Assembly (NCBI RefSeq): GCF_964213995.1
Contig: NC_135804.1
Location: 69,254,001-69,318,000, forward strand
Length of the DNA: 64,000 bases
Reading direction: 5' to 3'
Source: Mustelus asterias
Lineage: Eukaryota
The notes below the pieces were generated by a model. The model saw nothing but the letters and a program-made list of their open reading frames with translations, searched no databases and had not been told where the DNA came from. Made by a program: the position numbers and the translations under genes. This document shows positions 18,009 to 59,051 of the stretch, in pieces (the stretch's first letter is position 1; each line of letters begins with the position of its first letter).

Positions 18009-20144
18009 TCATTACACAGGACCAGATCTAGGATAGCTTGCTCCCTCGTAGGTTCCATGACATACTGTTCAAGGAAGCTATCGCGGTTACATCCTATGAA
18101 CTCCTCTTCAAGGCTGTCTTGACCAACCTGGTTTGACCAATGATATGTAGATTAAAATCACCCATGATAATTGCTGTACCATTTTTACATGCACAGTTAT
18201 TTCTTTGTTTATTTCTCACCCCACCATGATGTCATTATTTGGTGGTCTACAGACTACGCCTATCAGTGATGTTTTCTTCTTACTATTTCTAATTTCCACC
18301 CAAATGGATTCAACCTTTTTTTCGATAGAACCTACATCACCTCTCACTACCGCCCTGATGTCATCCTGAAATATCAGAACTACACCACCAACCTTACCAT
18401 CCTGTCGGTCCCTCCGAACAGTCTGATATCCCTGGATATTTAACTCCCAGTCGTGACCATCCTGCAACCATGTCTCTGTAATGGCCACCAAATCATACTC
18501 GTTCGCAATGATTTGTGCCGTCAATTCATTTACCTTGTTTCGAATACTATGAGCATTCAGATAAAGTGCCCTTATGGTAGTTTTTGTACCTTCTTTTTCA
18601 ATTCTAACACTTCCAACAATAACATCTCCTGAGTTCTCCTTCCTTTTAACATTTTTCCTAACTTTTGATATAGTTGGAACATTCTCCCCATATTTCGTCC
18701 TTGCTCCCTCCTTCTCGGACTCCTTACATAGGTTCCCATCCCCCGGCATATTAGTTTAAATGGTACTAAATTAGATTAAGTTAAATTAGTTTGAATGATA
18801 TTAGTTTAAACCCTCCCCAACCACTCTAGCAAACATTCTCCCTGGGACATCAGTCCCAGTCCTGCCCAGGTATAACCCGTCCAATTTGTATAGGTCCCAC
18901 CTCCCCCAGAACTGGTCTCAATGCCCCTGGAATCTGAAACCCTTCCCCGACACCATCTCTTCAGCCACGTATTTATCCGATATATCCTGTCATTTCTACT
19001 TTGACTAGCATGTGGCACCGGTAGTAATCCTGAGATCACTATCTTTGAGGTCCAATTTCTTAACATTCTTCCTCGCTCCCTGTATTCTGCTTTTAGGACC
19101 CCATCTCTTTTTTTACCCATGTCGTTTGTACCAACGTGTACTACGACCACTGGCTGTTCGCCCTCCTCCTTCAGAATATCCTGCAGCCACTCTGAGACAT
19201 CCTTGACCTGAGCACTAGGGAGGCAACATAGCATCCTGGAGTCTCGTTTGCGGCCACAGAAATGCCTGTCTATTCCCTTTACAATCGAATCTCCTGTAAC
19301 TATTGCACTGGCAGACTTTTTACCCCTCCCCTCTGCAGCAGAACCAACCGTGGTGCAACGGGTTTGGCTGCTGCTGCTTTCCCTCGAGAGGTCATTCCCT
19401 CAATAGTATCCAAAGCGGTATATCTGTTCTGCAGGGGAATGACCACAGGAGGTTCCTGCACTAACTGCCTGTCTCTCTTGCTCTGTCTGGTGGTCACCCA
19501 TTCCCTTCTTGCCTGTGCAGTCTGAGCCTGCGGTGTGACCACCTCTCTATACCTGCTATCCTTGATACGCTCTGATTCGCGGATGCTCCACAGTGTCTCC
19601 AGCTCTGAAATTCGAGCTTCCAGGAGCTGTAGCTGGAGACACTTTGTGCACACATGCTGACCCAGGGGACTAGAACTGTCCCCAGCCTGCCACATGGAGG
19701 CAGGAGAAGCAAACCATGGCTTGGAGCTTTCCAGTCATGTCTTACCCCTTTAAACTTTTTAAAGTTGTTTTGTTTCAGATTTTATCCAATTTTCTAGTGC
19801 CCTTCTTTCCTGCTCCTTGTTACTACCGAATATAACGTTTATAAACTATAAACCACAGAAATTACACAGAAACACTATTGCAGTGTCCAACAACAACAAC
19901 TATAATGCCAAGAGCAAAAAGAAAAAAATAACACTTACTTACCAATCAGCACTCTCCCTTGTAGCCTCTGCTGCTTGTTTCACCGAACTCGCTCTGTTCA
20001 CCCAACTCCAAAAGCACTTCTCACAGTCTGGGAGCACTCACCGTGCAGTCAGGGCAGCACTCTGAGGCCACTATTCTTATAGGTACAACTATACACAAGG
20101 CCCTGGAACTGGTTTTAATTAGTTGTACAAACAACCAGCTAACA

Positions 20145-20966
20145 CCTCACCCCGCCCCCACCCCTCCTTGCCACCCCCCTCGCCCGGCCCTCTCCCTTAC
20201 CCCACTGGTATCCCATCTTGCCCCACCTGTCACCCCCTCCCTGCCCCTCTCCCCCTGCCCCTATTCCCCTCCCCTTCATCCCTCACCGCCTTGCCCCCAT
20301 CCCTCTCCCCCTCCCTCTCCCCCTCCCCCTCACACCACGCCTGCCCTTTCCCCTCCCTTCTCCCTCTTGCCATGCCCCCACCCCCTCACGCCACCCACCC
20401 TCCCCCTCGCCCCACCCCCTCTCTCACTCACCCTGCCCCCCTCTCCCTCGCCGCACCCTTCCTCCCCCCTCAACCCGCCCCCCATCCCCCTTGCCCCCTC
20501 TTCCTCACCCCACCCCCCTCCCCCTCCTCACCTCTCCCTTGCCCCGCCCCACCCTCCCCCTCCCCCCACCCCACCCTCGCCCTTGTCCCGTCACTCTCCC
20601 CCTTGCCGGGCCCCTCTCCCCATTTCACACTGCACCTCTCCCCCAATGCCCCACGCTTCTGCCCACCCCTCTCCACCTTACCCCGCCCCTCTCCTCCTCG
20701 CTGATCTCCCCCACCCCCTCTCCCCTCCTTGCCTTCCCTTGTACCTCAAACTCCCATTCCCCTCTCCCCTTGCCCCACCCCTCTCCCCTTGGCCTGCCCC
20801 TCTCCCCTTGCCCTGCCCCTCTCCCCTTGCCCTGCCCTGCCTCACAACCTCTTGCCCTGCCACACACTCCCGTGCCCCGCCCCACACTCCCTTGCCGCGC
20901 CCCACACCCTCTTGCCCTGCCCCACAACCTCTTGCCTCCCCCCACACCCCGTTCCCCGCCCCACAC
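20145..20966. repeat. C-rich low-complexity tract (G-rich on the minus strand)
   Basis: About 0.8 kb of runs such as CCCCTCTCCCC and TTGCCCC. Confidence 0.9.
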
Positions 20967-22393
20967 ATAGCTAATGTGGTCCCGTTATTTAAGAAGGGTA
21001 GGAAGGATAACCCGGGAAATTATAGGCCGGTGAGCTTGACGTCCGTGGTTGGGAAGTTGTTGGAGAGGATTCTTAGAGATAGGATGTCTGCGCATTAAGA
21101 AAGGAATGAACTCATTAACGATAATCAGCATGGTTTTGTGAGAAGGAGGTCTTGCCTCACTAACCTGGTGGAGTTTTTTGAAGAAGTGACGAGAATGGTT
21201 GATGAGGGAAGGGCCGTGGATGTCGTCTATATGGACTTTAGTAAAGCGTTTGACAAATTCCCTCATGGTAGGTTGGTGTAAAAGGTTGGATCTCATGGGA
21301 TAAAGGGGGAGGTGGCTAGATGGGTGGAGAGCTGGCTTGGTCACAGAAGACAGAGGTGGTAGTGGAAGGGTCTTTTTCTGTCTGGATGCCTGTGACTAGT
21401 GGTGTTCCGCAGGGCTCTGTATCGGGACCTCTGCTGTTTGTGATTTATACAAACGATCTGGAAGAAGGAGTAACTGGGGTGATCAGTAAGTTTGCGGATG
21501 ACACGAAAATGGCTGGACTTGCAGATAGTGAGGAACATTGTCAGAGATTACAGAAGGATATAGATAGGCTGGAAATTTAGGCAAAGAAATGGCAGATGGA
21601 GTTCAATCCAGATAAATGCGAAGTGATGCATTTTGGTAGAACTAACGTCGGGGGGAGCTATACGATAAATGGCAGAACCATAAAGGGTGTAGATACGCAG
21701 AGGGACCTGGGCGTGCAAGTCCACAGATCCTTGAAGGTGATGTCACAGGTGGAGAAGGTAGTGAATAAGGCATATGGCATGCTTGCCTTTATAGGACGGG
21801 GCATAGAGTATAAAAGTTGGGATGATGTTGCAGATGTATAGAACGTTGGTTCGGCCGCATTTGGAATACTGCACCCAGTTCTGGTTGCCACACTACCGGA
21901 AGGACGTGGAGGCTTTAGAGAGAGTGCAGAGGAGGTTTACCAGGATGTTGCCTGGTATGGAAGGGCTTAGTTGTGAGGAGAGATTGGGTAAACTGGGGTT
22001 GTTCTCACTGGAAAGATGGAGGATGAGGGGTGACCTAATAGAGGTGTATAAAATTATGAAAGACACAGATAGGGTGAACGGTGGGAAGCTTTTTCCCAGA
22101 TCGGTGGTGACGTTCACGAGGGGTCATAGGTTCAAGGTGAGGGGGGAGGGAGGTTTAACATGGATACCAGAAGGATGTATTTTACACAGAGGGTGGTGGG
22201 GGCCTGGAATGCGCTGCCGGGCAAGGTGGTGGAGGCGGACACACTGGGAACGTTTAAGACTTATCTAGATAGCCGCATGAACGGAGTGGGAATGGAGGGA
22301 TACAAAAGAATGGTCTAGTTTGGACCAGGGAGCGGCGTGGGCTTGAAGGGCCGAAGGGCCTGTTCCTGTGCTGTATTGTTCTTTGTTCTTTGT
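20967..22393 (+). mobile_element. CR1 LINE RT to 3' end
   Basis: ANVVPLFKKG, NYRPVSLTS and SKFADDTK; tail tgttctttgttctttgt. Confidence 0.95.
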
Positions 22394-33369: not shown

Positions 33370-33498
33370 TTAGCTTTTCGTTTTCACGGCTGCGTATGTT
33401 AACCTTGTTTTTCGGAATGTCGTTTTCGACGATGACCTGGAACCTGCCAGATTCAGAGCAACGTAAGTCAATTTGCTCTCAGCGGTGCTCTGTATGGT
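33370..33498 (-). CDS. Exon 7, terminal coding exon with two ITIMs (TIQSTAESKLTYVALNLAGSRSSSKTTFRKTRLTYAAVKTKS*)
   Basis: Acceptor gatttacAG, phase 0; motifs LTYVAL and LTYAAV; stop TAA at 33372-33370. Confidence 0.8.
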   Translation of the reverse strand, partial: TIQSTAESKLTYVALNLAGSRSSSKTTFRKTRLTYAAVKTKS

Positions 33499-36400
33499 CT
33501 GTAAATCAACGACAGGGAGTATTTTACTATTTATTAAATTAAATTTATCGAAATTGCATCAAGTTGATTTTCAATATAATCTCAAAAGCAAATTATAGCA
33601 GACAAGATTAAAGTTTCCACGTGGGAACTGAGATTTACCTCTGTATATACCGCGTGTTATCTGTGTTGTGTCGGCATTTCGCCACGCTTGGAACCGGTCA
33701 GATAAAGAGCAGCGTACATCAGTTTGCCTTCGGCTGAATTTAGTTCCTTCTAGGAATTCAATGTTTAGTATTCAGTAAGTTTCATCTTTCGGACACAAGA
33801 TCTTGCATACATACATACAAATTAGAAACAGAAGCAGGCCGCTCAACCTCTAAAACCATTTTGCTATTCCTTAAGACATGTTTGATCCCCGTGTGGCCTC
33901 AATTTCACTGTCCTTTCTACGCCCTGAATCTTCAAGCCATACAAACTGCCCTAATCCAATAAGCTCCACAAGCATCTACGAATTACCGTATCTATCTAAC
34001 CTTCTACAGTTCCTTGGCATTTCCCAGCCATTATTCACAGTAGTTCTTTACTTTGAAAAAATAGCAAATCAAATTAGTGTTTTTTCAGTTTTCTCTCTTG
34101 TCAATCAAAAAGTTATCGAAGTCAACCTTGAAGTAATTGAATGAATATGCCTTCACCGCTCTCTGATTACATCAGTTCTACAGATGCGTGGCCCGCTGAG
34201 AGAGAAACAAATCAAATCTCCTCATCCTTGTCTTAAATGGTAAATCATGTTTTTTTTCAAACGGCATCACGTATTTTTAGTCTTTGCTACAAAGTATCAC
34301 ATTCTTGCAACGTCCATCCTGTCAAGGCGACTCAGCATTTTCTACTTTTCAAAAGATCACTTAGTCTTCTAAAGTGAAGAGGGTACAGGCCCAATCTGTT
34401 AAAAATGTCCTCATTAAATAACACGCTCATCCCAGCAATCAATCTGGTGAAACTTCTCTTAATTATTTGAACTGAAATTATTTTATTTCTTAATGAAGGG
34501 CCAAAGCTGCGTACAATACGTTTGGGCCGGAATTTTGCTGGCACGCCCACCCCGATTCCGGGGGCGGTCGCGACACGGAGGACGGCTTCCTCCGAAGACC
34601 TCTGGCGGGATAGTACAGACCTCGGGCGGAGGTGTCGGTCAGATTGTTCCTTCGGCACCGATGCTCAGCTGCAGCACTACACTTTATAATCCATTCTTCT
34701 TGCAATGAACGATAACATTCCATTGGGCATCCCAGCCACTTATGCGCCTTCTCAACCATATATTTCGGTTCATATTATTGTGTTCTGATTCAGGTACCAG
34801 GACATCCGTATGTCTCTGTACATCAGAGTCTAAAATATCTCCGCATAAAAAAACAATGTATGTTTTTTATTCTGACTGCTAAAATGGACAAATTCGCGAT
34901 CTCTCACGTTATATTCTATCTGTCATTTTTTGCACACTCTTTACCTATCCGTGACACTCTGCAGACTCCATATTTCCTCCTTGCCACTTACTCATCCATC
35001 TACTTTCTTTCATCAACATCTTTAGCAACCATGCATATAGTGTCATCATCCAAGTCGTTGATATCAATTGTAAATAATTGAGGACCCAAGACTGATACAC
35101 ATGACACTACAATTGATACATATTTTTCCAACCAGATAAAAGGCCAAAATGTGCCTACTCTATGTTTCCTGACAGCTAGATAGTCCTCGATAGATGCTAT
35201 CACCTGTGTCATGTGATCTTGCTATGTGTGGTAACCTTTGATGTCGAACATGATGGAATGTTTTTTCGAAATCCGCAGTATCCACAGTAACTCCACAGGT
35301 TCGGTTTTATTCACTTCGCTTGTTACTTTCTCAAATAACTCATACATTATGTCATAATAATTTCCAGGTTACAACCCCATGTTTACTCTGCTAACCTCCA
35401 TCAGATTTTCCAAGTGCCCTGTTACAACTCCTTTATTAATAGATTCCAGCATTTTCCCAATGGCAGATGTTAAGCTAATTGCCCTGTAGTTTCTGGAATA
35501 CTGTTTCCCTCCTTTCTTGAGCAAAGGAGCTACATTCGCTGTTTTATTCAAATCTAATTTGTCGCTGCCAGAATCTAGGAAATTTTGAAAATTTAAATCC
35601 AAGTCATCCATTATCTCAGCAGTTACTTATTGTAAGACCCTCGCAACAGTTGCATCATGTTTGGGAATTTTCAGATTTTTCGTTATATTATTTTTTCAGC
35701 AGCATCATCCTGCTGAAAGTAATCGTTTTATGTTCTTGCTTCCGTTTCGCATCGCGATCTCCAATTATTTCTGGTATGTGCTTTGTATCCTCTACAGCGA
35801 TATATGTTCCAATGATTCTGCTTTCGCTTGATTGGCAATCCTAATTCGTCAGACTCGCTCTTTGGAGGAGCAACACATTATAAGTAGTTGCTTTTACAAC
35901 ACCTGTGGAAACTCTTCCGATGTGTGCTGCATATTCATAGCGAACGATCGGTCCTGCTCTGATGTTTCACTTCATGTTTAGCCATTATTCGCTGTAATTT
36001 ATGCAACTTGTTCGTCTAACCTGCCAGTAATCTTCAGGGAATTGATTTTGTTTATTTCAATTTGATCCTGTTGATATCTTCCTTAGTCAGCCGCGGATAA
36101 TATGTCCGTCCCCTCGAGATTTTTTGTTCTTTCTGACTCAAATGGCTGAGAATTAGAAAACATCTCCTTAAATGTCCAAAGATGTGCGGGTTAGGTTGAT
36201 TGGCCAGGTTAAAATTGTCCCTGAGATGCGTAGTTAGAGGGATTAGCGGATAAATATGTGAGGGTAGGGCCTGGGTGGGATTGTGGTCGGTGCAGACTCG
36301 ATGGGCCGAATGGCCTCCTTCTGCACTGTAGGGTTTCTATGATTCTATGAAATGTCTGATAAAAGAAAGACAGCTGTGGATGCTGGAATAACAACAGAAA

Positions 36401-39400
36401 ATACTTGAAAATCTTAGCAGGTTGACAGCATCTGTAGAGAGAAAATAGAACGAAGTCCAGATCACCCTTCGTCAGAGCTTCGTCAGACCCCTTGTCAGCA
36501 TTTTGCAATAACAAAGGATCGAGTATGGAAGTAGCAAAGATCAAAGACCATTACAGCACAGAAACAGGTCCTTCGGCCTTCCAAGCTGAAATGTCAGCTT
36601 GTGAAAGAGAAAGACGGGCTGCCTGAACAGTATAAATAGATTTTTTAAATTCTGAATCGCCTGGTGGATAACTTTTTTTATTCTTAAGCAAAGAATAACG
36701 GGTGATCTCATTTCAAACCGCGTAAGAAGGATAGGCAACAGTGTTGCTCTCTGTTCTCGTTACCGATTCTACACTGAGATTAGAAATTTGAACTTTATTT
36801 GTAATATAAATGCCGTGGCACGTTTTCACCATGCTGCAGCTTGGTTTGCACAACAAGAAATGCAAATCTGCGAACCTTATTCTCACTATCTTTAGTAGCC
36901 GAAAAAGGCATGCCATTTTAGCTAATACAGATGGAAAGTTAAAACTGTATGAACTATTCAAATAGCTGGCAGAGTTTGCAAACGCTTCGACCATTTTTCT
37001 AATTTTACTTGTTTATACATAAAGTTGCGCTTTTACAGAAAAGGGGAAAAGTCAAGTCCAAATCCCCCACATGTTTAAAAGAGATTTATTTAATGTGATG
37101 TATCAATCATTCACCTGAACTTGAGAACACAAGTTCAGGATTGTTAACAAAATGTTCTTACCTCATCTGTACGCTGTGTAGTATTCATTGATTTTTTCCT
37201 TGCACCTGGTGAAATTCAAAAAGGATAACGTAAAAATAGGGGGCATATTTGCATTTGACCCGATGTCAATTAAGTAAAACGCAATTCATGCCAGCAAGCT
37301 ATCGTGATACGCTGATTTCGTAATATATCTCAAAATGTTCAAACCAAACGAATTTGTTTTGCTATCGCTTCTGTATTAAAGCTACGCAGGCAACATTGCA
37401 CTATTTAATCTACATTTTTATGGTTAGATCTTTATAATGCAGTTCGGAAAATGAAGCTGTGAGCATTATAATGACAGATACTCATGTAATACTTGAGTTT
37501 AAGCAACATGTAAGTGTGAAGGTATTTTTCCGTCAGTTAATTATGCGAATTATACCAATAAGCAGCTTTGCTCCCGCTTATAGTTACTCGAATCGGATAC
37601 TTTAAGATTTCGTCTGCGAGTAAATTATTTCCTGCAGTGTGAAAATTCTCATTCATACCTTTGCACTTCATGACTCCAATCGCTATCATTAGGGTCAAAA
37701 ATAGAATTGCAAGTACACCACGGAACCATCCACCGAGCATAAGAACGTTGATTTTAGAGGGATTAGCTATCAAAATTAGAAAATGTCATGTCAGCCATAT
37801 GTACACAGCTATCAATATCAAATGCATAATTTTCAATTACACTGTGAATTGAACATCATGATACAAAATATAAAACTTCGGTACATCATTTTAATTATCG
37901 ATATTTATGCAGCTGTTTTACGAATCGTTCGAAAAAACGTGGTTGAAAAATATAGATCATAGAATCCTAGAGTCGTAGAATCCCTACAGGGCCGAAGGAG
38001 GCCATTCATCCCATCGAGCCTGCACCGACAAAATTCCCACGCAGGCTCTATCCCCGCAACTCCACGTATTTACGCTTCTAAGGCCCCTGACACCAAGGCA
38101 CAATTCAGCATGGCCCACCTAACACACACATCTTTGGAGTATGGGAGGGAACCGGAGCAGCCGGAGGAAACCCGCGCTTTCGCAGGCAGAATGTGCAAAC
38201 TCCACACAGTCATCCGAAGCCCGAATTGAACCCGGGTCCCTCGCACTGTGAGACAGCAGTGCTTACCTCTGTGCAAGCCTGTTGGAGAAATAGCAGCAAT
38301 GTTGAATAAGGTGCCCATTGAATGGGCACATTCCCCTTCACGACTATACGAAATGCAATCGTTTTCAACTGATTGTGCCAACCAAAAAACAATTAAAATG
38401 TCGTTCCAAGTTTAATTGCACCACACGCAGAAAGGTTCCAAACAAATCGCTTGAGATCATCTTTCAAGGAAAGATTCATGACCGTGTATTTATTCATCTT
38501 ATCACAATTACCTGTGATCCTATTTTTAGTAGCATTACGAGTGAGTAACAACTTTATAAATGAGGAATCAAGTTGGCCTAGTTCGTATCTGCAGCATTAT
38601 GAAAAGATTCAATTGTTCGATTCCATAGCTCAGCGATCCATTATTTTTCAGTGCCCCGATTGAAAATCGATGCTGTATCGTTTTCTGAGTTGCAATGTTA
38701 TGCGGTTAATCTGATTTATGGGAGCAATACTGAAGACTCAAACTCATTATTGGTTAGGTTGCATGATGCAGTCGACAACATATCCTATTTTAAAACCAAA
38801 AGATTGGAAACCTTCGCCCAAAGAATACAATAAGATTCATCAATATATGAGCATCAAGCTACTCTAGTAATCACTTCCTATGCATCATCGTTTTTCATGC
38901 ATTTTTGTGAAGGGCGAAATACTAAACTATCATATTTCATATAAGATTACCTTCATCAAAAAACGAATAGCTGGCATTTGCTGGCATTGAGCTCGAAACG
39001 TGATATACTTGGCAGATGTAAACTGTGCCTTGTTCGATCGCCTGCTGTTTCAAGTTGCTGACAACTTCAAAAAGCCCCTCGGAATTTGCTTGTTGTTCAT
39101 TTTGAAATCCGCTGAGAATTTGAGCACCGTTTTTATGCCAGGTTAGGTTAAATCCTTTCGGATAAAAAGCCGCAGTTTTGCACTGGAGTCTAATAGTAGC
39201 AGATGAGATCTCTTCGGATGATATGGACATAATTTTCAGGGGAGCCGCTGGAGCTAAATTCAAGATAACAATACAGATAAATTGAAAAAGTGAGCTTCTG
39301 TTCTAAAAATTCGTAATTTTATTAATTACGTACAGCTTGTTCTTGGCAAGCAAGTTTCTTTAATAATCAGTATTTTTATATTGCTGCGTGGTGTTTTTAA

Positions 39401-41037
39401 TAGGTTTTCTCGGTCCCTCCACCCGTACGCTATTAAAGTACTACCAGCATGTTTAGCAAAATTGACTTGCATAACTTGTCCCTATTTATTTAAACCTATG
39501 TGTTACAGTCGGTATACTGCATTTAAGGATTTAGCGATTGGGAGAAGGGGGAGGGCCAGGGGGAGAGGAAAGGTGATAGCGGAGCGATATTATCGCTTGA
39601 CTACTAATCCAGAAAATCAACTAATATTCCGGGAACTGGCAAATGGTGGAATTTGAATTCCATTAACAATATCTGGAATTAAGAACCTACTGATCACCAT
39701 GAAACCATTGTCGATTGTCTGGGGAAAAACACGCATCTGGTTCAGTAATGTATTTTAAGGAACGAAATCTGCCGTCTTCTCGGTCTGGTCTACACGTGAC
39801 TCCAGATTCACAGCAATGTTGTTTACTCTGAACAAGGAAAACTAAGGATGGACGTTAAATGCTCGCCAGCCAGCGAAGCCCAAGTCCCACGAATAACTAA
39901 AAAATAAACAATTGTTGACACCAGCCATTCAGGAATAAACGTGGATGATAGAAGCTTGAAAGGCGCCTCCAAACGTTTGGATTGCGAGCCCCACTCTCTT
40001 ATAATTAGCGAAAGGGCATTGAAAATGCAAATATTGCGAGCGACTATAAAATTATTCATCCAGTTAGAACGTTCCCACATTGAAAACTAGTTTTACTTAT
40101 TAGTTTTGCTTGCGCTTTGCTTGGCAAACTTCAAGTCAAGTAGCATTTTTTTAAGATAGGGAGTTGATAAACTTTGCAGTGTCGTTGCTACTGCAGGTTT
40201 TCCACTTTGTTGAACATCTGTCCTTCTAATCAAGTGAATGTGCTTTCAGCGCTCTGCATTTATTTATTTTAATGGTCTATTAACCTTCGTTGATTGACTC
40301 CATCTACTAAGCATGACATATTTTCAACTTACCATATATGAGTACTTGCACCGCAATATCGTTCACAATCACCCGACGCTGAATTTTGACTGCACAGTGA
40401 TATGTTCCGGCATCCGGTATGTTGACATTCAGGAGTTGAAGGTACGCTCCACCTTTCATTATCTGGAAGCGTTTTCCGCTGTCCTCCTGCAGCAACCTCT
40501 TATTACCATCTTTCCACCAGAAAGCGGTTGCGTTTATAAAGTCGGTATGGAAAGGGAAAGGACATCGCAAGGTTACGTTTGTGCATCTGAGCGCCTTTAT
40601 TGGTTCAATTTCCGATGTGCCCATAGCAACTATAAACAAAAATGAACACACACATACTAAATCATACATATGCAATAAAAGTTGATGTATACTACGAAAA
40701 TAACATCACCCGTTCAGTCCACATATACCGTAACAATTTAATGTGCCTCACTGCTAGAATTATTCTCGAGTTCCAGCATTTGTATTTCGACTTGAGATTT
40801 CTAAATATGTTTTACTCACCCAGACCCTTCCGACCACTCGGAACACGCGGCATGGCAATAAACACAATTTTAACAAAAATAAAGACATTCACTTTTCCGC
40901 CAACTATGAGATCAACTTACTGTTGCGTCTGGTTCGCGAATAGTCATAGAAAACAAAATGAAAACATAAAATAGAAATCTACCTGGAAGGAAAATCGACA
41001 AAAAAACTTTGCCCCAAAGCGAACAACCCATGACCAT
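33370..41037 (-). CDS. Ig-superfamily type I membrane receptor, leader-V-C1-TM-ITIM tail (SIRP-like / V-C1 receptor), 7 coding exons; premature TAA in exon 6
   Basis: Exons 41037-40983, 40629-40333, 39253-38951, 37766-37659, 37205-37162, 33749-33639 and 33498-33370 are all bounded by GT-AG with matching phases (1,1,1,1,0,0). Products: 299 aa if stopping at the exon 6 TAA, 311 aa if exon 6 is skipped, 348 codons if the stop is repaired. Confidence 0.85.
33639..33749 (-). CDS. Exon 6, ITIM exon with internal stop (KELNSAEGKLMYAALYLTGSKRGEMPTQHR*HAVYTE)
   Basis: Acceptor attcctAG, donor GAG|GTAAAT, 111 nt, phase 0-0; ITIM LMYAAL; TAA at 33659-33657. Confidence 0.75.
34140..36170 (-). mobile_element. 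Old CR1 ORF2 in intron 5 of the receptor gene, with a GC-rich MITE-like insert at about 34524-34665
   Basis: ANVAPLLKKG, NYRAISLTS and [10 protein letters not shown]; the insert starts GGGCCGGAATTTT (Harbinger-like terminus). Confidence 0.8.
36172..36350 (+). mobile_element. SINE 3' half (same subfamily as 10957-11295)
   Basis: Near-identical to 11105-11295. Confidence 0.9.
37162..37205 (-). CDS. Exon 5, short juxtamembrane cytoplasmic exon (GARKKSMNTTQRTDE)
   Basis: Acceptor tttcaccAG, donor GAG|GTAAGA; 44 nt converts phase 1 to phase 0. Confidence 0.75.
37659..37766 (-). CDS. Exon 4, stalk plus transmembrane helix (NPSKINVLMLGGWFRGVLAILFLTLMIAIGVMKCK)
   Basis: Hydrophobic run followed by basic KCK; acceptor ttttgatAG, donor AAAG|GTATGA; 108 nt, phase 1-1. 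Confidence 0.85.
37950..38280 (-). mobile_element. HE1/V-SINE-type SINE in intron 3
   Basis: Reverse-complement SINE core and tail. Confidence 0.85.
38951..39253 (-). CDS. Exon 3, Ig C1-set domain
   Basis: LQCKTAAFYPKGFNLTWHKNG ... GLFEVVSNL ... YICQVYH, matching the C1-set CxxxxFYP / W / YxCxVxH pattern; acceptor aatttAG, donor GAAG|GTAATC; 303 nt. Confidence 0.92.
39570..39905 (+). mobile_element. Interspersed SINE-like repeat (Deu-type domain suspected)
   Basis: catgaaaccattgtcgattg...catctggttca.taatg...ggaa..aaatctgcc, shared with 2445-2580, 52520-52670 and 62560-62750. Confidence 0.6.
40333..40629 (-). CDS. Exon 2, Ig V-set domain
   Basis: NVTLRC ... FWWK ... LQLLNV..DAGTYHC motifs; acceptor tttgtttatAG, donor TATG|GTAAGT; 297 nt, phase 1-1. 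Confidence 0.92.
40983..41037 (-). CDS. Exon 1, leader peptide MVMGCSLWGKVFLSIFLP
   Basis: ATG at 41037; 55 nt ending CCAG|GTAGAT (phase 1), joining the V exon in frame to give ...FLPVAMG. Confidence 0.75.
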
Positions 41038-49512: not shown

Positions 49513-51304
49513 ACATAGAGCATAGAACAGTACAGCACAGAACAGGCCCTTCGGCCCACAATGCTGTGCCGAGCTTTATCTGAAACCAAGATCAAGCTAT
49601 CCCATTCCCTACCATCCTCGTGTGCTCCATGTGCCTATCCAATAACCGCTTAAATGTTCCTAAAGTGTCTGACTCCACTATCACTACACGCAGTCCATTC
49701 CACACCGCAACCACTCTCTGAGTAAAGAACCTAGGTCGGACATTCTTCCTATATCTCCCACCATGAACCCTATAGTTATGCCCCCTTGTAATAGGTCCAA
49801 CCACCCGAGGAAATAGTCTTTGAACGTTCACTCTATCTATCCCCTTCAGCATTTTATAAACCTCTATTAAGTCTCCGCTCAACCTCCTCCGCTCCAGAGA
49901 GAACAGCCCTAGCTCCCTCAACCTTTCCTCATAAGACCTACCCTCCAAACCAGGCAGCATCCTGGTAAATCTCCTTTGCACTCTTTCCAGTGCTTCCACA
50001 TCCTTCTTATAGTGAGGTGACCAGAACTGCACACAATATTCCAAATGTGGTCTCGCCAAGGTTCTGTACAGTTGCAGCATAACCCCACGGCTCTTAAACT
50101 CCAACCCCCTGTTAATAAAAGCTAACACACTATAGGCCTTCTTCACAGCTCTATCTGCTTGAGTGGCAACCTTCAGAGATCTGTGGATATGGACCCCAAG
50201 ATCTCTCTGTTCCTCCACAGTCTTCAGAACCCTATCTTTGACCCTCTAATCCACATTTAAATTAGTCCTACCAAAATGAATCACCTCAAATTTATCAGGG
50301 TTAAACTCCATCTGCCATTTTTCAGCCCAGCTTTGCATCCTATCTATGTCTCTTTGCAGTCTACAACAGCCCTCCACCTCATCCACTACTCCACCAATCT
50401 TGGTGTCATCAGCAAATTTACTGATCCACCCTTCAGCCCCCTCCTCTAAGTCATTAACAAAAATCACAAATAGCAGAGGACCACGCACTGATCCTTGTGG
50501 CACTCTGCGAGCAACTTGCCTCCAGTCCGAAAAATTTCCATCCACCACCACCCTCTGTCTTTGATCAGATAGCCAGTTACCTATCCAATCGGCCAACTTT
50601 CCCTCTATCCCACACCTTACTTTTATCATAAGCTGACCATGGGGGACCTTATCAAACGCCTTACTAAAATCCATGTATATGACATCAACTGTCCTACCTT
50701 CATCAACACACTTAGTTACCTCCTCAAAAAATTCAATCAAATTTGTGAGGCACAACTTGCCCTTCACGAATCCGTGCTGACTATCCCGGATTAATCCGTA
50801 TCTTTCTAATTGGTCATAAATCCCATCTCTAAGGACCTTTTCCATCAACTTACCAACCACCGAAGTAAGGCTAACCGGCCTATAATTACCAGGGTAATTT
50901 CTATTCCCTTTCTTATACAGAGAGACAACATTCACCACTCTCCAGTCCTCTGGCACCATCCCCGTGGACAGTGAGGACCAAAAGACCAAAGCCAAAGGTT
51001 CTGCAACCTCATCCCTTGCCTCCTAAAGAATCCTAGGATATATTTCATCAGGCCCAGGGGACTTACCGACCTTCAGTTTATTCAAAACTACTCGTACATC
51101 CTCCCTTGGAACATCTCCTTCCTCCAACCTATTAGCCTGTAACACCTTCTCATCCTCAAAAACATGGCCCCTCTTCTTGGTGCACACTGAAGAAAAGTAT
51201 TCATTCATCACCTCCTATCTCTACTGACTCCATACCCAAGTTCCCACTACTGTCCTTGACCGGCCCTAACCTCACCCTGGTCATTCTTTTATTTCTCACA
51301 TAAG
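49513..51304 (-). mobile_element. Young CR1 LINE (same subfamily as 2772-5448)
   Basis: Near-identical sequence; RT motifs in ORFs 50246-50995 and 49592-50218. Confidence 0.96.
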
Positions 51305-51395
51305 AATCATGTAAAATACACCGCCAAAATGTCTGTATGGTGGTAGTAAGTCTCAGATACGCAAACAAACCTCTATAATTGATGTGCCTCATGCA

Positions 51396-52076
51396 GATAT
51401 TATGGTTCAGGTTAGAAACTCCAAAGTGTTTTATGAGGCCCTCCTGAGCCAGACGTTTTGCATGTTGAACATAGCTTGGATGAGCACGAGATGTTTCATT
51501 CTAGGTCTTACTCAAGTGAGCCCACAAGGGAGCTTTTATGAAACAAAATTTAGTTAATTATTTAATCAAAATGTATAGCAAGAAAATTGCCAAGAACGTT
51601 TATCAATTAGAAACAAGATCAAAACAGCCACACCAGTGTTTAACCCTTAATGCATCTATGTAATGATGTTCCAATCAAAACCAAAATCCAATAAACAAAA
51701 TCCCTCAGACAGATTTACCACTGCACAGGCTAAAGCTCACATGATACTAGAATCCAGTTCCCTATGTTGAATTCTGCTGTCAAATGATCTTGAAAACTCA
51801 GAGCACCCTGCAGTCGCATGAGCTCCGCAACGCACCAAACCACAGATTGATTACTGCAGCATGGCTACAAGCCTTTCTTTCATTAAACTGGTAAAATCTT
51901 CAAAGCAGAACTGGGAGAGAAACTTATTTTCTAGCTTGCTGCTGAGACTGCTTCGAAGACTGCAGCCAGACCTACCCATAGCTTTTGTCTCCACCCAACA
52001 ATGACATCACCTCAGGCTGTGAGCATGAAATCATTTTTTAAAAAAACATCTCTTAAAGGGACACTAACCTCACACA
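51396..52076. mobile_element. Probable degraded solo LTR
   Basis: About 680-bp non-coding block, (T)ATTATGG..CAGG.TTAGAAACTCC...TTAAAGGGACAC...CACA, resembling the organisation of 8518-9291. Confidence 0.4.
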
Positions 52077-53618
52077 GTAAAACTATAAATGTTCCTGCCA
52101 TTACAAAAACAGGACAATATTCGCTAAGCAATTCTGCAATAGCAACTGCTGATCGAATATCCCGTCATCAATCTTCTGTTATGGCTGATCATCAGAACCT
52201 TCGGCAGTAAAGTTACAATGTAATGAAAAAAAACCGATTGTTCGAGCAGTTTAATTGCTGAACACGTTATACACGTTGGCTATGTTTCACATTACTTTAT
52301 TTTTTCATAATTTGCTGCATTGTTTCTTCTAAATTGATTACATAGTTCACTTTCCTAGTTGGAGAGCTGATGGTGCAGTGGGAATCCAACTTCTGCCAAT
52401 AATTCAGGGACTCAGGATAATGGTTTGGGAACATTTGTTAAATGTCATCGTGGTAACCACTGGAAATTTAATTAACTCAATATAATTTGCAATTGAAAGC
52501 TAGTCTTATTAAAGTTGATCATAATTTGAAAAAAAAATGATTGTTTTGCACACAGTCCATGCATCACCAAAGGTTTCCAGGAAGTAATTCTGCCGTCTTT
52601 GCATTGTCTAACATACAAGTGATTGCACACGGACAGAAATAGTATTAGTTACTAATTGTCTTCTGAAGTTACCGAAGAAAGGCACTTGTGGCATGCGGCG
52701 TGCAGTTTTATAATGTGCAATACACGGCCAAAATATCTCTGTGGTGGTAGTAAGTCTCAGTAATGCGAATTCAGTTCAAGAAGAATTATGAAGGGTATCA
52801 GATTCAGACTATGCAAACCACACCACCATCCCATAAATTAACTGAGACAAACGAGAAACTGCTGGGGTTCTGATCTTACAAGGGTACAACTCCCCGAAAT
52901 TAAAAATTCTTTTTCGATCAGGTCTATCATCTCATCGTTCGGCTACAGGTGTCATCCACATTAAGTGTTCCATTGGTGATTGAATACATTCACACTGAAG
53001 CGAAGTACGTAAAGTAGGCGGATTTTAACTTCTGGTTGTAAATGCGGAGGTAAATGAATCGCATTTCAAAACTACATGCAAATTAAACAAAAACAAACAC
53101 GTAATCCATTTTATGAACAGGTATTCCTGAGTAGCATCACAGCAAAGCAAAAATCTTTGCAAAACGTTTCTCGTGGAATATGGGAGAGGCTGCCAAAACA
53201 TCACTGTTGCCCATACATATTTCCTTTTGAAAAGTTCGTCGTGGTCGCTTTCTTGAATGCTATAATAATTCTGCTGCGGGTAAGCCCGTTTTGTTAGAGG
53301 GAAAGGAATGTCAAGATGTTCATCATGTTCGGCGGAAACCTTCTTTCGTTTCTTCTGCAAATGTGTCAGCGTCGGTAAACGATTCTTTCAAAGTTCATAC
53401 AGACAAAGGATTAACAAGCCATTGCAAACCGTAAGCCACTGCCGCAAAAATGGACAGCAGTACTGTTTTATGTGTCAAAGATTAATATTGCCATGGATGG
53501 ATATCCAGTTCTTTGGCAGCTGGTGGGCACCTGCACTTTCATTGACGCCTATCTAGTCAACACAGCGTCAGGATGTTACATCAATCTCCAAGTGTTACGC
53601 CAGCAGGATTCGACTCAT

Positions 53619-54720
53619 GGGGCCCGATTTTACCATTGCGTGGCGCCCAGTTTCGGACGCAAAAACATGGTAAAGTCGGGTGTGAGGCCATTAACTCGGT
53701 CCGGTCCGCGCAGATGCCCACTTTACCAAGGCCGGAAAATGGCCACGATCCAATTCGCCCCGAAACGGGCGCAACGGCGATTTAAATGAATTTGCACGCA
53801 TTTAAATTGAATTAATAGGCTGCCCACCCACGTTTATCAGCATTTTCCCCTTTACCATCACGTTCGTAAGTCCAGATATGGTGTGAAACAGACATGCTTG
53901 GCCAAGGTCTGTTGCGGGAGCTCCAGCTTCTGAAGAGGTGAGTTCAGAGCTTCCAACGGCTGCCTGACTCAGATCGGTGCTGGGAAGGGTGTGGGGTGGG
54001 GGGGGGGGTGGGGGGGGGGGCGGTGGAGAGAGGCGGGCCAGATCATTCTCTGGTGAGGGGGGTAGGGAGGACAGATCGTTTTCTGGTGGATGGGGAGAGG
54101 GAGGAATGCCCGATCGTGTCTGGTTGGGGGGGGGGGGCGGGGACGGGAGGGGGGAGAGGCAGAGGGAGGCCAGATTGTTGTACGGTGGGGAGGGGGTGGA
54201 AAGGCAGAGGGAGGCCAGGTTGTTATCTGGTGGTGGGGGGCGGGGTGGGGGGGAGGCAGAGGGAGGTCAGATTGTTGTCTGGTGGGGGGGAGGAGTGTGA
54301 CCCAATCATTCTCTGGTGAGGGGAGTTGGAGAGAGCAGGGGGGGTGGGGCGTTGGCGGGGGGGGGGTCCACTGCCACTCTGCGGGCAGTCAGTGGGGGGG
54401 GAAGTGGGGCAGGGGGTCGCCATTGGCCTGTTTGGGAGGGTGGGTTGATAAGGGGGACAGTTATGTTGTGGGGATGGGGTGATGTCTGTGGGGACCATCG
54501 CTCCCGCTTTCCACTCCCGGGCCGCAAAAAGCGGACAAAGCGGTCTGGGAGCGATGTGACAGGGGCAAGTTTTTAATTTTTTTTCTCACTGCGCATGCGC
54601 AATTCAAAGCCCCGATCCTTGCAACAGCACTTCCGGTATGCTAAGCCCCGCCCACATTGCAATTCAAGCTTTTTTGTCAGGCTAAGTACATATGGGGGCG
54701 CCTCGGAACAGATTTCCCAA
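53619..54720 (+). mobile_element. Non-autonomous Harbinger-like element, copy 1 (one terminus missing)
   Basis: Begins with TIR GGGGCCCGATTTTACCATT; internal G-rich repeats. Confidence 0.75.
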
Positions 54721-56009
54721 GGGGCCCGATTTTACCATTTTGATTCGACATGCTGAATTTGGGCGCAATTCAGATCTGTACTGTAAAAGTGTTCTCCGGC
54801 GCCCCCATACGCACTTAGCCTGAAAAATAAGTCGTCAGTCTGAATTGTGCTGTGGGCGGGACTTATCGCTCCAAAACGCTGCTGCTCCGATCGGAACTTT
54901 GAACTGCACATGCACAGTGAGAAAACAATTTGCAAAATGTGCCCCTGTCACATCTCTCCCAGGCTGCAAAAAGTGGATAAAGCAGCCGGGAAGTGAAAAG
55001 CGAGAACGATGGCCCCCACAGATCACCCCAACCCCACAACATGACTGTCCCCCTTATCCACCCAATCCCCTCCACTACCCAAATCGATTGTGACCCTCTG
55101 CCCCTTTCCCCCCACCGATTGCCCGCAGAGTGGCAGCAGACCCCTCCCCTACCTGTCACTCCCCCCCCACCCCACCAGAGATCCATCTGGCCTCCTTCCC
55201 ACCCCACCAGTGAGCGATTGGGCCTCCCCCCACCAGAGAAAGATCGGGCATCCCCCCCACCAGAGGATGATTATGCCTCCCACCACCAGATAATGATTTG
55301 ACCTCCCCTCCCGCAACGAATGATCGGGCCTCCCCTCCACCAGATAATGATCGGGCCTGCCCCCCAGAGAATGATCAGGCCTCCCACTTCCCTCCCCCCT
55401 CCAGTAAATGATCTGGCCTCCCTCCTTCCCCTACCGGACGATGATCTGGCCTCTCCCCACCCCACCGGAGAATGATCGGGCCTCCATCCTCCCTCCTCCC
55501 TCCACTGTCCACCCCCCCACCGCCCCCCCCTCACCAGAGATGCATTTGACCCTCCTTCCTCACCCTCACCAGAGGACGATTCGGCCTCCCTCCTCCCCTC
55601 CTCCCCCCCCCCCAACCAGAGAATGATCTGACCCACCTCCCTTCCCCCCCAACCCAACGATCTGAGTCACAGAGTCACTGGAAGCTCTGAACATACCTCT
55701 TCAGAAGCTGAAGCGCCCGAAACAGACCTTTGCTGAACATGTCTGTTTCACGCTGAATCTGGATGGGCGAACACAATGGTAAACGGAGAAATGCTGGTAA
55801 AGGTGGGCGGACAGGCCATTAATTCAATTTAAATGCATGTGAATGCATTTAAATCCCATTGCGCCTGTTTCGGGCGCGATTTGGATTGTGGCCATTTTCG
55901 GGCCTTGGTAAAGTGGGCATCTGCGTGGACGCGGGTGTGGATCGTGTTGATAGCCTCACGTCAGACTTTACCAAATTTTCGCGTCCGTACAATGGTAGAA
56001 TCGGGCCTA
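54721..56009 (-). mobile_element. Non-autonomous Harbinger-like element, copy 2 (both TIRs)
   Basis: TIRs GGGGCCCGATTTTACCATT (54721) and AATGGTAGAATCGGGCCT (55991-56008); inverted homolog of copy 1. Confidence 0.8.
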
Positions 56010-56240
56010 TAGAATCAAAGAATCCATACAGTCCCAAAGGATGCCATTTCGGCCTGTCCAGTCGGCACTGGCAGCGATCCCACCCAGGCTCTACCCCTGT
56101 AGCCCCACGTAGTCACCCTGCTCGTCCAGCTGACACTAAGGGACAATTTAGTATGGCCAATCAACGTAACTCACACACGTTTGGAGTGTGGGATGGAGCA
56201 ACCGGAGGAAACTAACGCAGACACGTGCAAACTCCACAGA
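56010..56240 (-). mobile_element. SINE 3' portion
   Basis: Reverse-complement HE1-type core and tail. Confidence 0.8.
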
Positions 56241-59050: not shown

Positions 59051-59051
59051 G

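What the first reader, a model, noticed from the sequence alone, without database searches (positions are those of the whole stretch)
33370..41037. Hidden V-C1-TM-multi-ITIM immune receptor gene; only three of its seven exons appear in the ORF track
Seen: seven phase-compatible GT-AG exons encode leader, V-set, C1-set, TM and a tail with LMYAAL, LTYVAL and LTYAAV (ITIM consensus S/I/V/LxYxxI/V/L) plus a VYTE tyrosine. Known: C1-set domains are largely limited to antigen receptors, MHC/B2M, tapasins, SIRPs and some B7-family members such as B7-H6. Non-rearranging V-C1 receptors with ITIMs resemble proposed antigen-receptor precursors and SIRP-alpha (which has V-C1-C1). Inference: a lineage-specific inhibitory receptor of a cartilaginous fish, probably one member of a poorly characterised family.
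Basis: partly seen in the sequence, partly recalled or inferred. Interest (0 to 1): 0.85.

Follow-up and report, generated by a model that had tools for sequence, protein, structure and literature searches.

The report
Shark SIRP-like inhibitory receptor gene
This is a real seven-exon shark gene for a surface immune receptor whose signalling tail is laid out like that of mammalian SIRP-alpha; it is one of a large family that genome pipelines have predicted but I found no paper on, and this copy has a premature stop in its tail.

Summary
The gene is real. Seven minus-strand GT-AG exons (41037 to 33370) with compatible phases encode a leader, a short V-like Ig domain, a C1-set domain (Pfam 44.7 bits, cut-off 21), a TM segment and three tail exons. 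A horn-shark RefSeq protein (P0012) maps colinearly onto all seven exons.

One correction: exon 6 carries an in-frame TAA (33659-33657). As written, the window encodes only LMYAAL. VYTE, LTYVAL and LTYAAV lie after the stop. DNA contigs from 2 of 3 other samples read GAA (Glu) there, as do relatives, so the stop is a segregating, derived allele.

The gene belongs to a chondrichthyan-wide multigene family. RefSeq names its members inconsistently: SIRP-alpha-like in 18 of 46, also tapasin-related, Ig lambda-like, CD276 and B7-H6-like. The only non-chondrichthyan hit in the two full-length word-index searches was rodent SIRP-alpha. Tail tyrosines are spaced 23-14-23 (SIRP-alpha 24-17-24). The C1 tree does not join the family to SIRP C1 domains, and there is one C1 domain, not two.

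Expression is untested: no RNA run was found. Other first-stage notes on this genome describe many similar genes. I found no paper on the family. Verdict: a new member of a known kind, of moderate interest.

The parts
40983..41037 (-). Exon 1: start codon and signal peptide (55 nt, ends in phase 1; donor GT at 40982-40981)
   Evidence: Sequence read. ORF 40912..41037. The leader of P0014 aligns here, including the first three residues (weak, E 3.2).
40333..40629 (-). Exon 2: short V-like Ig domain (297 nt, phase 1 to 1). It has two N-glycosylation sequons, an extra Cys where 20 of 21 relatives have Gly, and a J-like strand without G-x-G.
   Evidence: Pfam Ig_3 E 6.2e-5 and V-set E 2.3e-4, both under their cut-offs. 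P0012 residues 10-123 align at 46% identity, E 4.8e-31. Conserved columns; Cys spacing of 55.
38951..39253 (-). Exon 3: C1-set Ig domain (303 nt, phase 1 to 1) with the Y-x-C-x-V-x-H hallmark
   Evidence: Pfam C1-set E 1.7e-11, 44.7 bits against a cut-off of 21. PDB best hits are Ig constant domains, with UrIg2 at 8.7e-10. 67% identical to the whale-shark protein P0003. Tree placement.
37659..37766 (-). Exon 4: stalk and transmembrane segment (108 nt, phase 1 to 1), with an Arg in the outer part of the hydrophobic run
   Evidence: Kyte-Doolittle 19-mer maximum 2.34. Aligns to the TM of P0003, P0012 and P0014 (E 0.023 to 0.5).
37162..37205 (-). Exon 5: first cytoplasmic exon (44 nt, phase 1 to 0), basic juxtamembrane stretch
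   Evidence: Second-ranked of 221 open phase-1-to-0 candidates by upstream pyrimidine content (0.75), with a GTAAGA donor. Aligns to P0012 residues 259-277 (47% identity, E 0.71, weak alone) and lines up in A1.
33639..33749 (-). Exon 6: tail module 1 (111 nt, phase 0 to 0), with LMYAAL and, 23 residues on, the VYTE tyrosine. It is interrupted by an in-frame TAA at 33659-33657.
   Evidence: P0012 residues 279-320 align with Glu opposite the stop. Contigs of X1, X2 and X4 read C for A at 33659, which turns TAA into GAA; X3 keeps A.
33370..33498 (-). Exon 7: tail module 2 (LTYVAL, and 23 residues on LTYAAV) plus the stop codon at 33372-33370
   Evidence: P0012 residues 318-354 align at 57% identity, E 6e-7. 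Local alignment to the first tyrosine pair of rodent SIRP-alpha scores 33, reached by 28 of 2000 shuffles.
33657..33659 (-). Polymorphic nonsense codon (TAA in the window and in X3; GAA in X1/X2 and X4)
   Evidence: Glu sits at this place in P0012, P0156, P0157 and P0158, and Tyr in P0161.

Best explanation
This is one gene of a large family of type I membrane receptors found across cartilaginous fish. The layout is leader, short non-rearranging V-like domain, one C1-set domain, TM segment, and a tail built from exon-sized modules. Each module carries an ITIM-type tyrosine followed 23 residues later by a second tyrosine. The window gene is a long-tailed (inhibitory-type) member with two such modules.

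By analogy with SIRP-alpha, the inferred mechanism is this: the N-terminal domain binds a ligand, a Src-family kinase phosphorylates the paired tyrosines, and each doubly phosphorylated module docks the tandem SH2 domains of SHP-1 or SHP-2, which damp activation. None of these steps is shown here.

The allele in this window carries a derived nonsense codon in module 1. It would give a roughly 299-aa receptor with a single ITIM and no complete module. The stop lies 21 nt before the last exon junction, so nonsense-mediated decay is not expected (general knowledge). The Glu allele seen in other individuals gives about 348 aa with both modules.

Shown: exon structure, domain identities, family membership, tyrosine spacing, the polymorphism. 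Inferred: expression, ligand binding, phosphatase recruitment, inhibitory effect.
For: - Exon borders and phases.
- C1-set above the Pfam cut-off.
- Colinear mapping of Heterodontus P0012 on all seven exons, with Glu opposite the stop.
- The exhaustive HMMER search with the C1 exon gave 537 proteins at E up to 0.001. Single-C1 hits of 200-500 aa were 36-68% identical. The 10 of these that I looked up are all chondrichthyan.
- 17 of 18 hits to P0012 are chondrichthyan. Of the 46 hits to P0074, 45 name a chondrichthyan and one row shows no organism.
- Pfam V-set and C1-set each match 21 of 21 aligned members.
- The window keeps 23 of 27 columns conserved at 90% or more, including both Cys-Trp-Cys cores.
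- Tyrosine spacing in the window is 23-14-23. Among 90 stored relatives the commonest spacings are 23 (51 times) and 14 (25 times). Rodent SIRP-alpha has 24-17-24.
- BLASTP of P0012 against SIRP-alpha P0169 gives E 8e-12 over V-end plus C1. A second colinear alignment places the four tail sites opposite each other; in P0012 the first of them is Asn, not Tyr.
- The C1 tree puts the window inside a 14-row subfamily (SH-aLRT 92). That subfamily holds both long-tailed ITIM forms and short-tailed forms, the pattern of paired receptors.
Against: - No RNA run holds the stretch. The four runs found are DNA contigs that cover the introns, so no splice junction or expression is shown.
- The window allele has a stop before three of the four tyrosines.
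- The window's own tail pieces resemble the SIRP-alpha tail only weakly: module 1 scores 22, reached by 647 of 2000 shuffles.
- Rodent SIRP-alpha C1 domains fall outside the family in the C1 tree, on long branches, next to lungfish SIRP-like proteins.
- Pairs of an ITIM with a second tyrosine at about this spacing occur in several unrelated receptor families (recalled), so the tail layout could be convergent.
- Six of the seven differences from other individuals that fall in the tail exons change the amino acid, which fits weak constraint as well as it fits immune diversification.
- No fold could be predicted.
Confidence: 0.75

Rival explanations
1. It is a decaying pseudogene. The stop in exon 6, the lost G-x-G of the J-like strand, the extra cysteine and the mostly non-synonymous tail differences would all mark a copy drifting out of use in a large, fast-turnover family.
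For: - TAA at 33659-33657 in the window, and the same base in the X3 contig.
- G39 to C, T204 to I and P125 to A at columns conserved in 90% or more of relatives.
- No G-x-G in the V-like domain.
- Six of seven tail-exon differences change the residue.
- No expression data.
Against: - All twelve splice dinucleotides, the ATG and the four ectodomain and TM exons are open.
- 23 of 27 conserved columns are kept, including all core Cys, Trp and D-x-G-x-Y-x-C residues.
- The stop is a single base away from the Glu of relatives, and contigs of 2 of 3 other samples carry Glu.
- The stop is late and leaves a membrane receptor with one ITIM.
- Loss of G-x-G is shared with intact relatives of the same subfamily, such as P0012, P0158 and P0161.
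Confidence: 0.13
2. It is a B7/butyrophilin-type ligand (like CD276 or B7-H6) rather than a SIRP-like receptor: an IgV-IgC surface protein that is recognised by receptors on other cells.
For: - After titin, CEA, DCC and NCAM, the best solved-structure matches to the V-like exon are CD276 (3.3e-7) and PD-L1 (1.4e-5).
- Pfam's butyrophilin Ig-C model scores 27.2 bits against a cut-off of 27 on the C1 exon.
- RefSeq names 3 of 46 relatives 'CD276 antigen homolog' and 3 'NCR3 ligand 1-like'.
- All-phase-1 Ig exons are also the B7 pattern (recalled).
Against: - C1-set scores far higher than the butyrophilin model (44.7 against 27.2 bits).
- 12 of 21 aligned relatives, all outside the window's own subfamily, keep a J-like N-G-T-G-x-x-L-x-V strand; some subfamily members also keep a G-T-G.
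- With the family profile, SIRP-alpha 2wng (8e-25) ranks above CD276 (6.4e-21).
- The modular two-tyrosine tail with 23-residue spacing is not a B7 feature (recalled).
- The family includes short-tailed partners, as paired receptors do.
Confidence: 0.07
3. It is a relic of the antigen-receptor precursor in the sense proposed for UrIg and UrIg2, closer to Ig/TCR than to any innate receptor family.
For: - UrIg2 (9dmx) is the third-best solved structure for the family profile, at 1.5e-29, and is in the top 60 for the C1 exon alone.
- The V(J)-C1 layout without rearrangement is the layout discussed for such precursors (PMC10751288, passages read).
- RefSeq names 4 of 46 relatives 'immunoglobulin lambda-1 light chain-like'.
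Against: - UrIg and UrIg2 have a VJ domain plus several to nine C1 domains, and the paper has no occurrence of the word ITIM (PMC12227049, passages read). This gene has one C1 domain and an ITIM tail.
- Whole-chain scores grow with the number of Ig domains in the target.
- In the C1 tree, multi-C1 shark proteins (P0001, P0005) sit outside the family.
- The V-like domain is 10 residues shorter between its cysteines than the SIRP-alpha V domain.
Confidence: 0.05

Closest known systems
SIRP-alpha (SHPS-1 / PTPNS1) and the SIRP paired-receptor family
   Same: - A non-rearranging N-terminal V-type domain followed by C1-set domain(s), a TM segment and a tail with four tyrosines in two pairs.
- Spacing of 23-14-23 here against 24-17-24 in rodent SIRP-alpha.
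- Colinear BLASTP of the close relative P0012 with SIRP-alpha through ectodomain, TM and the four tail sites.
- It was the only non-chondrichthyan hit to P0012.
- It is the commonest automatic name for relatives, 18 of 46 plus 2 'SIRP beta-1-like'.
- Long-tailed and short-tailed members sit in one subfamily.
   Different: - One C1 domain instead of two.
- A V-like domain 10 residues shorter between its cysteines, with no G-x-G in this gene.
- SIRP-alpha C1 domains do not group with the family in the tree. They sit with lungfish SIRP-like proteins.
- The window's tail exons are only weakly similar in sequence.
- Ligand unknown. Synteny not tested.
UrIg / UrIg2 (non-rearranging shark Ig-like genes)
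   Same: Cartilaginous-fish genes with an unsplit V-type exon followed by C1-set exons. UrIg2 is among the best solved-structure matches.
   Different: [quoted passage not shown] Here there is one C1 domain, a TM segment and an ITIM tail.
B7 family (CD276/B7-H3, PD-L1, B7-H6)
   Same: An IgV-like plus IgC ectodomain on phase-1 exons. CD276 and PD-L1 are among the best V-exon matches. Some relatives are auto-named CD276 or NCR3LG1-like.
   Different: The second domain is a C1-set domain by a wide margin. Relatives keep a J-like strand. The tail carries modular tyrosine pairs.
[quoted passage not shown] 2019)
   Same: Described as non-rearranging IgSF genes of VJ-C1 type. I saw only the reference-list title and one mention in PMC10751288; the rest is recalled.
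   Different: Could not be compared. The paper is not held and no PRARP sequence was available from any tool.

Membership tests
C1-set immunoglobulin domain proteins | Match to the Pfam C1-set model above its curated cut-off | tested here: met
   PF07654: E 1.7e-11, 44.7 bits against a cut-off of 21, residues 7-86 of the 100-aa exon. 21 of 21 aligned relatives also match.
C1-set immunoglobulin domain proteins | Core Cys-Trp-Cys and the Y-x-C-x-V-x-H motif on strand F (the motif is recalled) | tested here: met
   C147, W161, C205, V207 and H209 (P0012 numbering) are all kept in the window exon.
SIRP family | N-terminal V-set domain encoded by one unsplit exon that includes a J-like G strand | tested here: inconclusive
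   A single exon runs from leader junction to C1 junction. V-set scores only 21.8 bits against a cut-off of 26 in the window, but 21 of 21 relatives match V-set. G-x-G is absent here and present in relatives. Cys spacing is 55 against 65 in SIRP-alpha.
SIRP family | Two membrane-proximal C1-set domains (V-C1-C1) | tested here: not met
   One C1 exon lies between the V and TM exons. tblastn of the C1 exon against the whole window finds nothing else better than E 0.076. Most relatives also have one C1 domain.
SIRP family | Cytoplasmic tail with four tyrosines in two ITIM-type pairs | tested here: met
   LMYAAL, the VYTE tyrosine, LTYVAL and LTYAAV are spaced 23-14-23, against 24-17-24 in P0169. 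In this allele a stop follows the first of them.
SIRP family | Phylogenetic grouping of its domains with SIRP domains | tested here: not met
   In the quick ML tree of 60 C1 domains, the 48 chondrichthyan rows form one group (SH-aLRT 93). Both rodent SIRP-alpha C1 domains lie outside it on long branches. Resolution is poor (101 columns), and no V tree was made.
SIRP family | Binding of SHP-1/SHP-2 to the phosphorylated tail; CD47 as ligand | not testable with these tools
   Requires biochemistry.
SIRP family | Conserved synteny with the SIRP locus | not tested
The 64-kb window holds no other recognisable cellular gene among ORFs of 85 aa or more, only retroelement ORFs and low-complexity ORFs.
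   There are three matches. One (LMYAAL) precedes the stop, and all three are in frame in the Glu allele.
Rearranging antigen receptors (Ig/TCR) | V and J encoded by separate segments | tested here: not met
   The V-like exon runs uninterrupted into its last strand and ends at a GTAAGT donor that splices to C1. Recombination signal sequences were not searched for.
UrIg/UrIg2 | VJ domain followed by several C1-type domains | tested here: not met
   There is one C1 exon only. The definition is taken from PMC12227049 passages.
B7/butyrophilin family | IgV plus IgC ectodomain that matches B7 or butyrophilin models best | tested here: inconclusive
   Butyrophilin Ig-C model 27.2 bits (cut-off 27) and CD80-like C2-set 19.3 bits (cut-off 21), against C1-set 44.7 bits. 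CD276 and PD-L1 are among the V matches. The family profile ranks SIRP-alpha above CD276.

The most novel reading that the evidence does not exclude
The family is the cartilaginous-fish counterpart of the SIRPs. If so, non-rearranging V(J)-C1 paired receptors with exon-modular, two-tyrosine SHP-docking tails go back to the jawed-vertebrate ancestor, and sharks expanded them into large clusters. On this reading the stop/Glu polymorphism at 33659 is not decay. It is a maintained allele that sets how many docking modules, and so how much inhibition, this receptor delivers.
Probability: 0.2. Interest if true: 0.7.

Novelty: new member of a known kind. Interest (0 to 1): 0.45.

Why it matters
C1-set domains are rare outside antigen receptors, MHC molecules and a few relatives, so every non-rearranging V-C1 gene in sharks bears on how antigen receptors arose.

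This gene shows that sharks, rays and chimaeras carry a large, clustered family of such genes with SIRP-alpha-like tails and with short-tailed partners. Pipelines predict these genes but name them inconsistently, and I found no paper on them.

Giving the family one name would tidy the annotation of more than a dozen genomes. It would also offer a shark model of paired inhibitory and activating receptors. It makes one question testable: do the SIRPs and their two-tyrosine docking modules predate the split between bony and cartilaginous fish?

The segregating stop that removes three of the four tail tyrosines is a natural experiment on tail length.

Tried and rejected
- **Six-exon alternative.** I first could not reproduce the phases. 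The TM exon ends in phase 1 and the LMYAAL exon starts in phase 0. I considered a model in which the TM exon reads on to a GTAACT donor. I rejected it once one search found the 44-nt exon 5, which P0012 also supports.
- **Short intron inside exon 6.** A 34-nt intron was considered and rejected as too short and frame-breaking.
- **The search for homologous proteins with the C1 exon** found nothing. Its length window excludes full-length relatives.
- **Sequencing runs.** The four runs found are DNA, so read laying gave no splice evidence. It did give the polymorphism.
- **Rfam** found nothing in the window.
- **Paralogue in the window.** A search for a second copy found none.
- **Literature.** Searches found no description of the family. 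One search (PRARP) returned unrelated acronyms. One search added nothing new. One search was badly posed (min_terms 1) and is worthless.
- **Arg in the TM segment.** I considered it a sign of an activating receptor and set that aside. The Arg lies at the outer edge of the hydrophobic run, and P0161, a long-tailed relative, has one nearby.
- **Not attempted.** I made no V-domain tree and no tree with curated NKp30, B7, tapasin or TCR references, because no tool supplied those sequences.
- **Supplements.** Supplementary files of PMC12227049 and PMC10751288 were not asked for. They may list other V-C1 genes of sharks.

Full report
**What is in the sequence**

On the minus strand between 41037 and 33370 there are seven exons. 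Each is bounded by AG and GT, and their phases fit:
- Exon 1: 41037-40983. ATG and hydrophobic leader; ends in phase 1.
- Exon 2: 40629-40333. 297 nt, phase 1 to 1.
- Exon 3: 39253-38951. 303 nt, phase 1 to 1.
- Exon 4: 37766-37659. 108 nt, phase 1 to 1.
- Exon 5: 37205-37162. 44 nt, phase 1 to 0.
- Exon 6: 33749-33639. 111 nt, phase 0 to 0.
- Exon 7: 33498-33370, including the stop codon.

Exon 5 is not obvious by eye. A script listed 221 open phase-1-to-0 candidates between exons 4 and 6. This one ranked second by upstream pyrimidine content (0.75) and has a GTAAGA donor.

LMYAAL and VYTE lie in exon 6, and LTYVAL and LTYAAV in exon 7. The window has no N.

Lengths given below are sums of exon lengths.

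**One thing the finding's text left out**

Exon 6 contains an in-frame TAA at 33659-33657, between LMYAAL and VYTE. As written, the window encodes about 299 residues and ends after a single ITIM.

**Domains**

The exon-3 peptide matches Pfam C1-set at E 1.7e-11 (44.7 bits, cut-off 21). The butyrophilin Ig-C model just reaches its cut-off (27.2 against 27).

The best solved-structure matches to exon 3 are Ig constant domains. The top row scores 1.4e-16 for the whole chain. Shark UrIg2 is at 8.7e-10.

The exon-2 peptide is an Ig domain, but alone it is below every Pfam cut-off (Ig_3 23.9 against 30; V-set 21.8 against 26). Its best solved matches are titin I-set domains, CEA, DCC, NCAM, CD276 and PD-L1.

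The exon-2 domain has 55 residues between its cysteines, against 65 in the V domain of rodent SIRP-alpha. So it is a short V-like domain.

Exon 4 holds a hydrophobic run (best 19-mer hydropathy 2.34) with an Arg near its outer end.

**Relatives**

- The word-index search with the C1 exon found nothing. Its length filter shuts out full-length proteins.
- The exhaustive HMMER search with the same exon found 537 proteins at E up to 0.001 and 153 at 1e-10.
- Among these hits is a set of 200-500-aa proteins with a single C1 match at 36-68% identity. The ones I fetched have the same layout: leader, V-like domain, C1 domain, TM segment, and often a tail with repeated L-T-Y-A-x-L and x-V/E-Y-A-x-x motifs.
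- The 10 that I looked up by name are all chondrichthyan. They come from Heterodontus, Chiloscyllium, Rhincodon, Heptranchias, Callorhinchus, Mobula, Amblyraja and Mustelus. I looked up names for only 20 of the 150 listed.
- Searching with the full-length horn-shark relative P0012 (E cut at 1e-10) gave 18 proteins. Seventeen are chondrichthyan and one is rodent SIRP-alpha, P0169, at E 1.5e-11.
- Searching with the sevengill-shark member P0074 (E up to 0.001) gave 46 proteins. 45 rows name a chondrichthyan and one row shows no organism.
- The automatic names of those 46 disagree: 18 SIRP-alpha-like, 2 SIRP-beta-1-like, 9 tapasin-related, 4 Ig lambda-like, 3 NCR3-ligand-1-like, 3 CD276 homolog, 1 MHC class II beta-like and 6 unnamed.
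- Within a species the hits sit on one chromosome-sized record, for example 99,651,266 bases in Heterodontus.

**Support for the exon model**

In a tblastn of 13 relatives against the window, P0012 aligned in order to six exons:
- V exon: 46% identity, E 4.8e-31.
- C1 exon: 58%, E 7e-32.
- TM exon: E 0.5.
- Exon 5: 47%, E 0.71.
- Exon 6: 40%, E 2e-4.
- Exon 7: 57%, E 6e-7.

The leader of P0014 aligned to exon 1 (E 3.2). The weak pieces would mean little alone. Their order and their borders are what count.

The window keeps 23 of the 27 alignment columns that are conserved in 90% or more of 21 relatives, including the Cys-Trp-Cys cores and D-x-G-x-Y-x-C. It departs at G39 (Cys here), V121 (Ile), P125 (Ala) and T204 (Ile).

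Twelve of the 21 aligned relatives, all outside the window's own subfamily, carry a J-like N-G-T-G-x-x-L-x-V strand at the end of the V-like domain. In the window's subfamily this strand is degenerate, though some members still keep a G-T-G, and the window has neither glycine. No second copy of any exon lies in the window.

**The stop is polymorphic**

No RNA run was found. The four runs that hold the stretch are DNA contigs that cover introns and exons alike. They come from one study, three samples and a coded organism. They differ from the window by about 1.5-3% here, for example 14 of 604 letters in X1.
- At 33659 the contigs of X1 and X2 (one sample) and of X4 read C for A. That turns TAA into GAA, Glu.
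- The X3 contig keeps A. So 2 of 3 other samples show Glu and 1 of 3 shows the stop.
- Contigs drop minor variants, so heterozygosity cannot be judged.
- Relatives have Glu at that place (P0012, P0156, P0157, P0158; P0161 has Tyr). The stop is therefore the derived state.
- Of the seven listed differences that fall in tail exons, one is synonymous, five change a residue and one is the stop/Glu site.
- The table of differences was cut off before the TM, C1 and V exons, so nothing can be said about them.

**Resemblance to SIRP-alpha**

The window's tail tyrosines are spaced 23, 14 and 23 residues. Among 90 stored relatives the commonest tyrosine-to-tyrosine spacings are 23 (51 times) and 14 (25 times). 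Rodent SIRP-alpha has 24, 17 and 24.

Each pair is one exon here, and exons 6 and 7 align to each other (score 50). Relatives carry 0, 1, 2 or 4 such modules: 51, 28, 10 and 1 of the 90.

BLASTP of P0012 against SIRP-alpha gives E 8e-12 over the end of V plus the first C1 domain. A second colinear alignment (E 8e-9) runs through TM and tail and sets the four tail sites opposite each other; in P0012 the first of them is Asn, not Tyr.

With the family profile, SIRP-alpha 2wng ranks sixth of 11,099 matched solved chains (8e-25). It follows titin, an IgA1 chain, UrIg2 (1.5e-29), a chain named CT3 and CEA, and it stands above CD276 (6.4e-21). Whole-chain scores favour targets with many Ig domains.

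**Evidence against calling it a SIRP**

- There is one C1 domain, not two.
- The window's own tail exons are only weakly like the SIRP-alpha tail. Exon 7 scores 33, reached by 28 of 2000 shuffles. The first piece of exon 6 scores 22, reached by 647 of 2000.
- In a quick ML tree of 60 C1 domains (101 columns; 26 of 56 forks unresolved) the 48 chondrichthyan rows form one group (SH-aLRT 93).
- Both SIRP-alpha C1 domains lie outside that group on long branches. The first sits with lungfish proteins that RefSeq calls SIRP-like.

So the family works like a SIRP on paper, but membership is not shown.

Within the family, the window's C1 domain sits in a 14-row subfamily (SH-aLRT 92). Its nearest rows are Rhincodon P0003, Stegostoma P0157, P0161 and P0158, and Heterodontus P0012 and P0014. 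The subfamily also holds ray proteins and short-tailed forms such as P0160, P0162 and P0015. That is the pattern of paired receptors.

**Literature**

In the held library I found no description of this family. I ran searches for UrIg plus shark; cartilaginous fish plus ITIM plus C1-type; SIRP plus cartilaginous fish; signal regulatory protein plus shark; and elasmobranch plus ITIM plus multigene family plus IgSF.
- PMC12227049 (abstract and passages read): UrIg2 has a VJ domain and nine C1-type domains. The words ITIM, SIRP and PRARP do not occur.
- PMC10751288 (passages read): it discusses VJ-C1 genes as antigen-receptor precursors and cites the chicken PRARP paper. I could not read that paper, nor the 2023 UrIg paper.
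- PMC12975943 (passages read): it gives the SIRP-alpha layout and its SHP-1/2 signalling.

Subscription journals and supplements may hold a description that I could not see.

**Earlier notes of this scan**

Fifty-nine first-reader notes on this genome mention ITIM. Several describe leader-VJ-C1-TM genes with ITIM tails or Arg-TM short tails, singly and in tandem clusters. Some lie on the same sequence record 1.2-1.4 Mb and 10.3-10.5 Mb before this window. These notes are unchecked. They fit the picture of a large family but are not independent evidence.

**Verdict**

The family is already predicted by pipelines in at least 14 chondrichthyan species and resembles a well-known kind of receptor. 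I therefore rate it a new member of a known kind, with interest 0.45. The extras are the segregating stop that removes three of four tail tyrosines and the clear modular tail.

Noticed in passing
window 36172-36354: A 183-base stretch inside intron 5 is missing from the contigs of X1, X2 and X4. These join 36171 to 36355 with three other letters between. It lies in a repeat whose summed depth is in the millions. It looks like a polymorphic SINE-type insertion in the window's haplotype.
   Followed up: partly
window 36257-36350 and 37965-38058: Two copies of a high-copy repeat lie in inverted orientation (94 nt, 82% complementary). They flank exons 4 and 5, the TM and first cytoplasmic exons. 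Such pairs can favour exon skipping or back-splicing. Skipping both exons (152 nt) would shift the frame. Untested.
   Followed up: no
window 37659-37766 (exon 4): An Arg sits in the outer part of the TM hydrophobic run of a long-tailed ITIM receptor. Most long-tailed relatives have Gly or Ala there; P0161 has an Arg one place away. Short-tailed relatives have a Y-R-S motif at the start of their TM segment.
   Followed up: partly
window 40333-40629 (exon 2): There is an extra, presumably unpaired Cys where 20 of 21 relatives have Gly (G39 in P0012 numbering). It could allow disulfide-linked dimers or could simply be a substitution.
   Followed up: no
window 441-31100 and 49592-62488: Most long ORFs of the window are reverse-transcriptase or endonuclease fragments of non-LTR retroelements in both orientations, for example 3812-5425, 5995-7659, 14330-15109 and 50246-50995. 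This is judged by eye from the translations. No other cellular gene was recognised.
   Followed up: no
window 12686-14012, 20043-21098, 53977-55657: Long low-complexity stretches are open in several frames at once (Pro/Ser/Leu-rich on one strand, Gly/Arg/Glu-rich on the other). They look like simple-sequence or satellite-like DNA rather than genes.
   Followed up: no
protein P0001 and others: The best whole-protein hits to the C1 exon are shark and ray proteins with 6-12 C1-type domains that RefSeq calls 'titin-like' or uncharacterised (Carcharodon P0001, Mobula P0002, Heptranchias P0005). Their many-C1 layout recalls UrIg2 as described in PMC12227049. Not compared.
   Followed up: no
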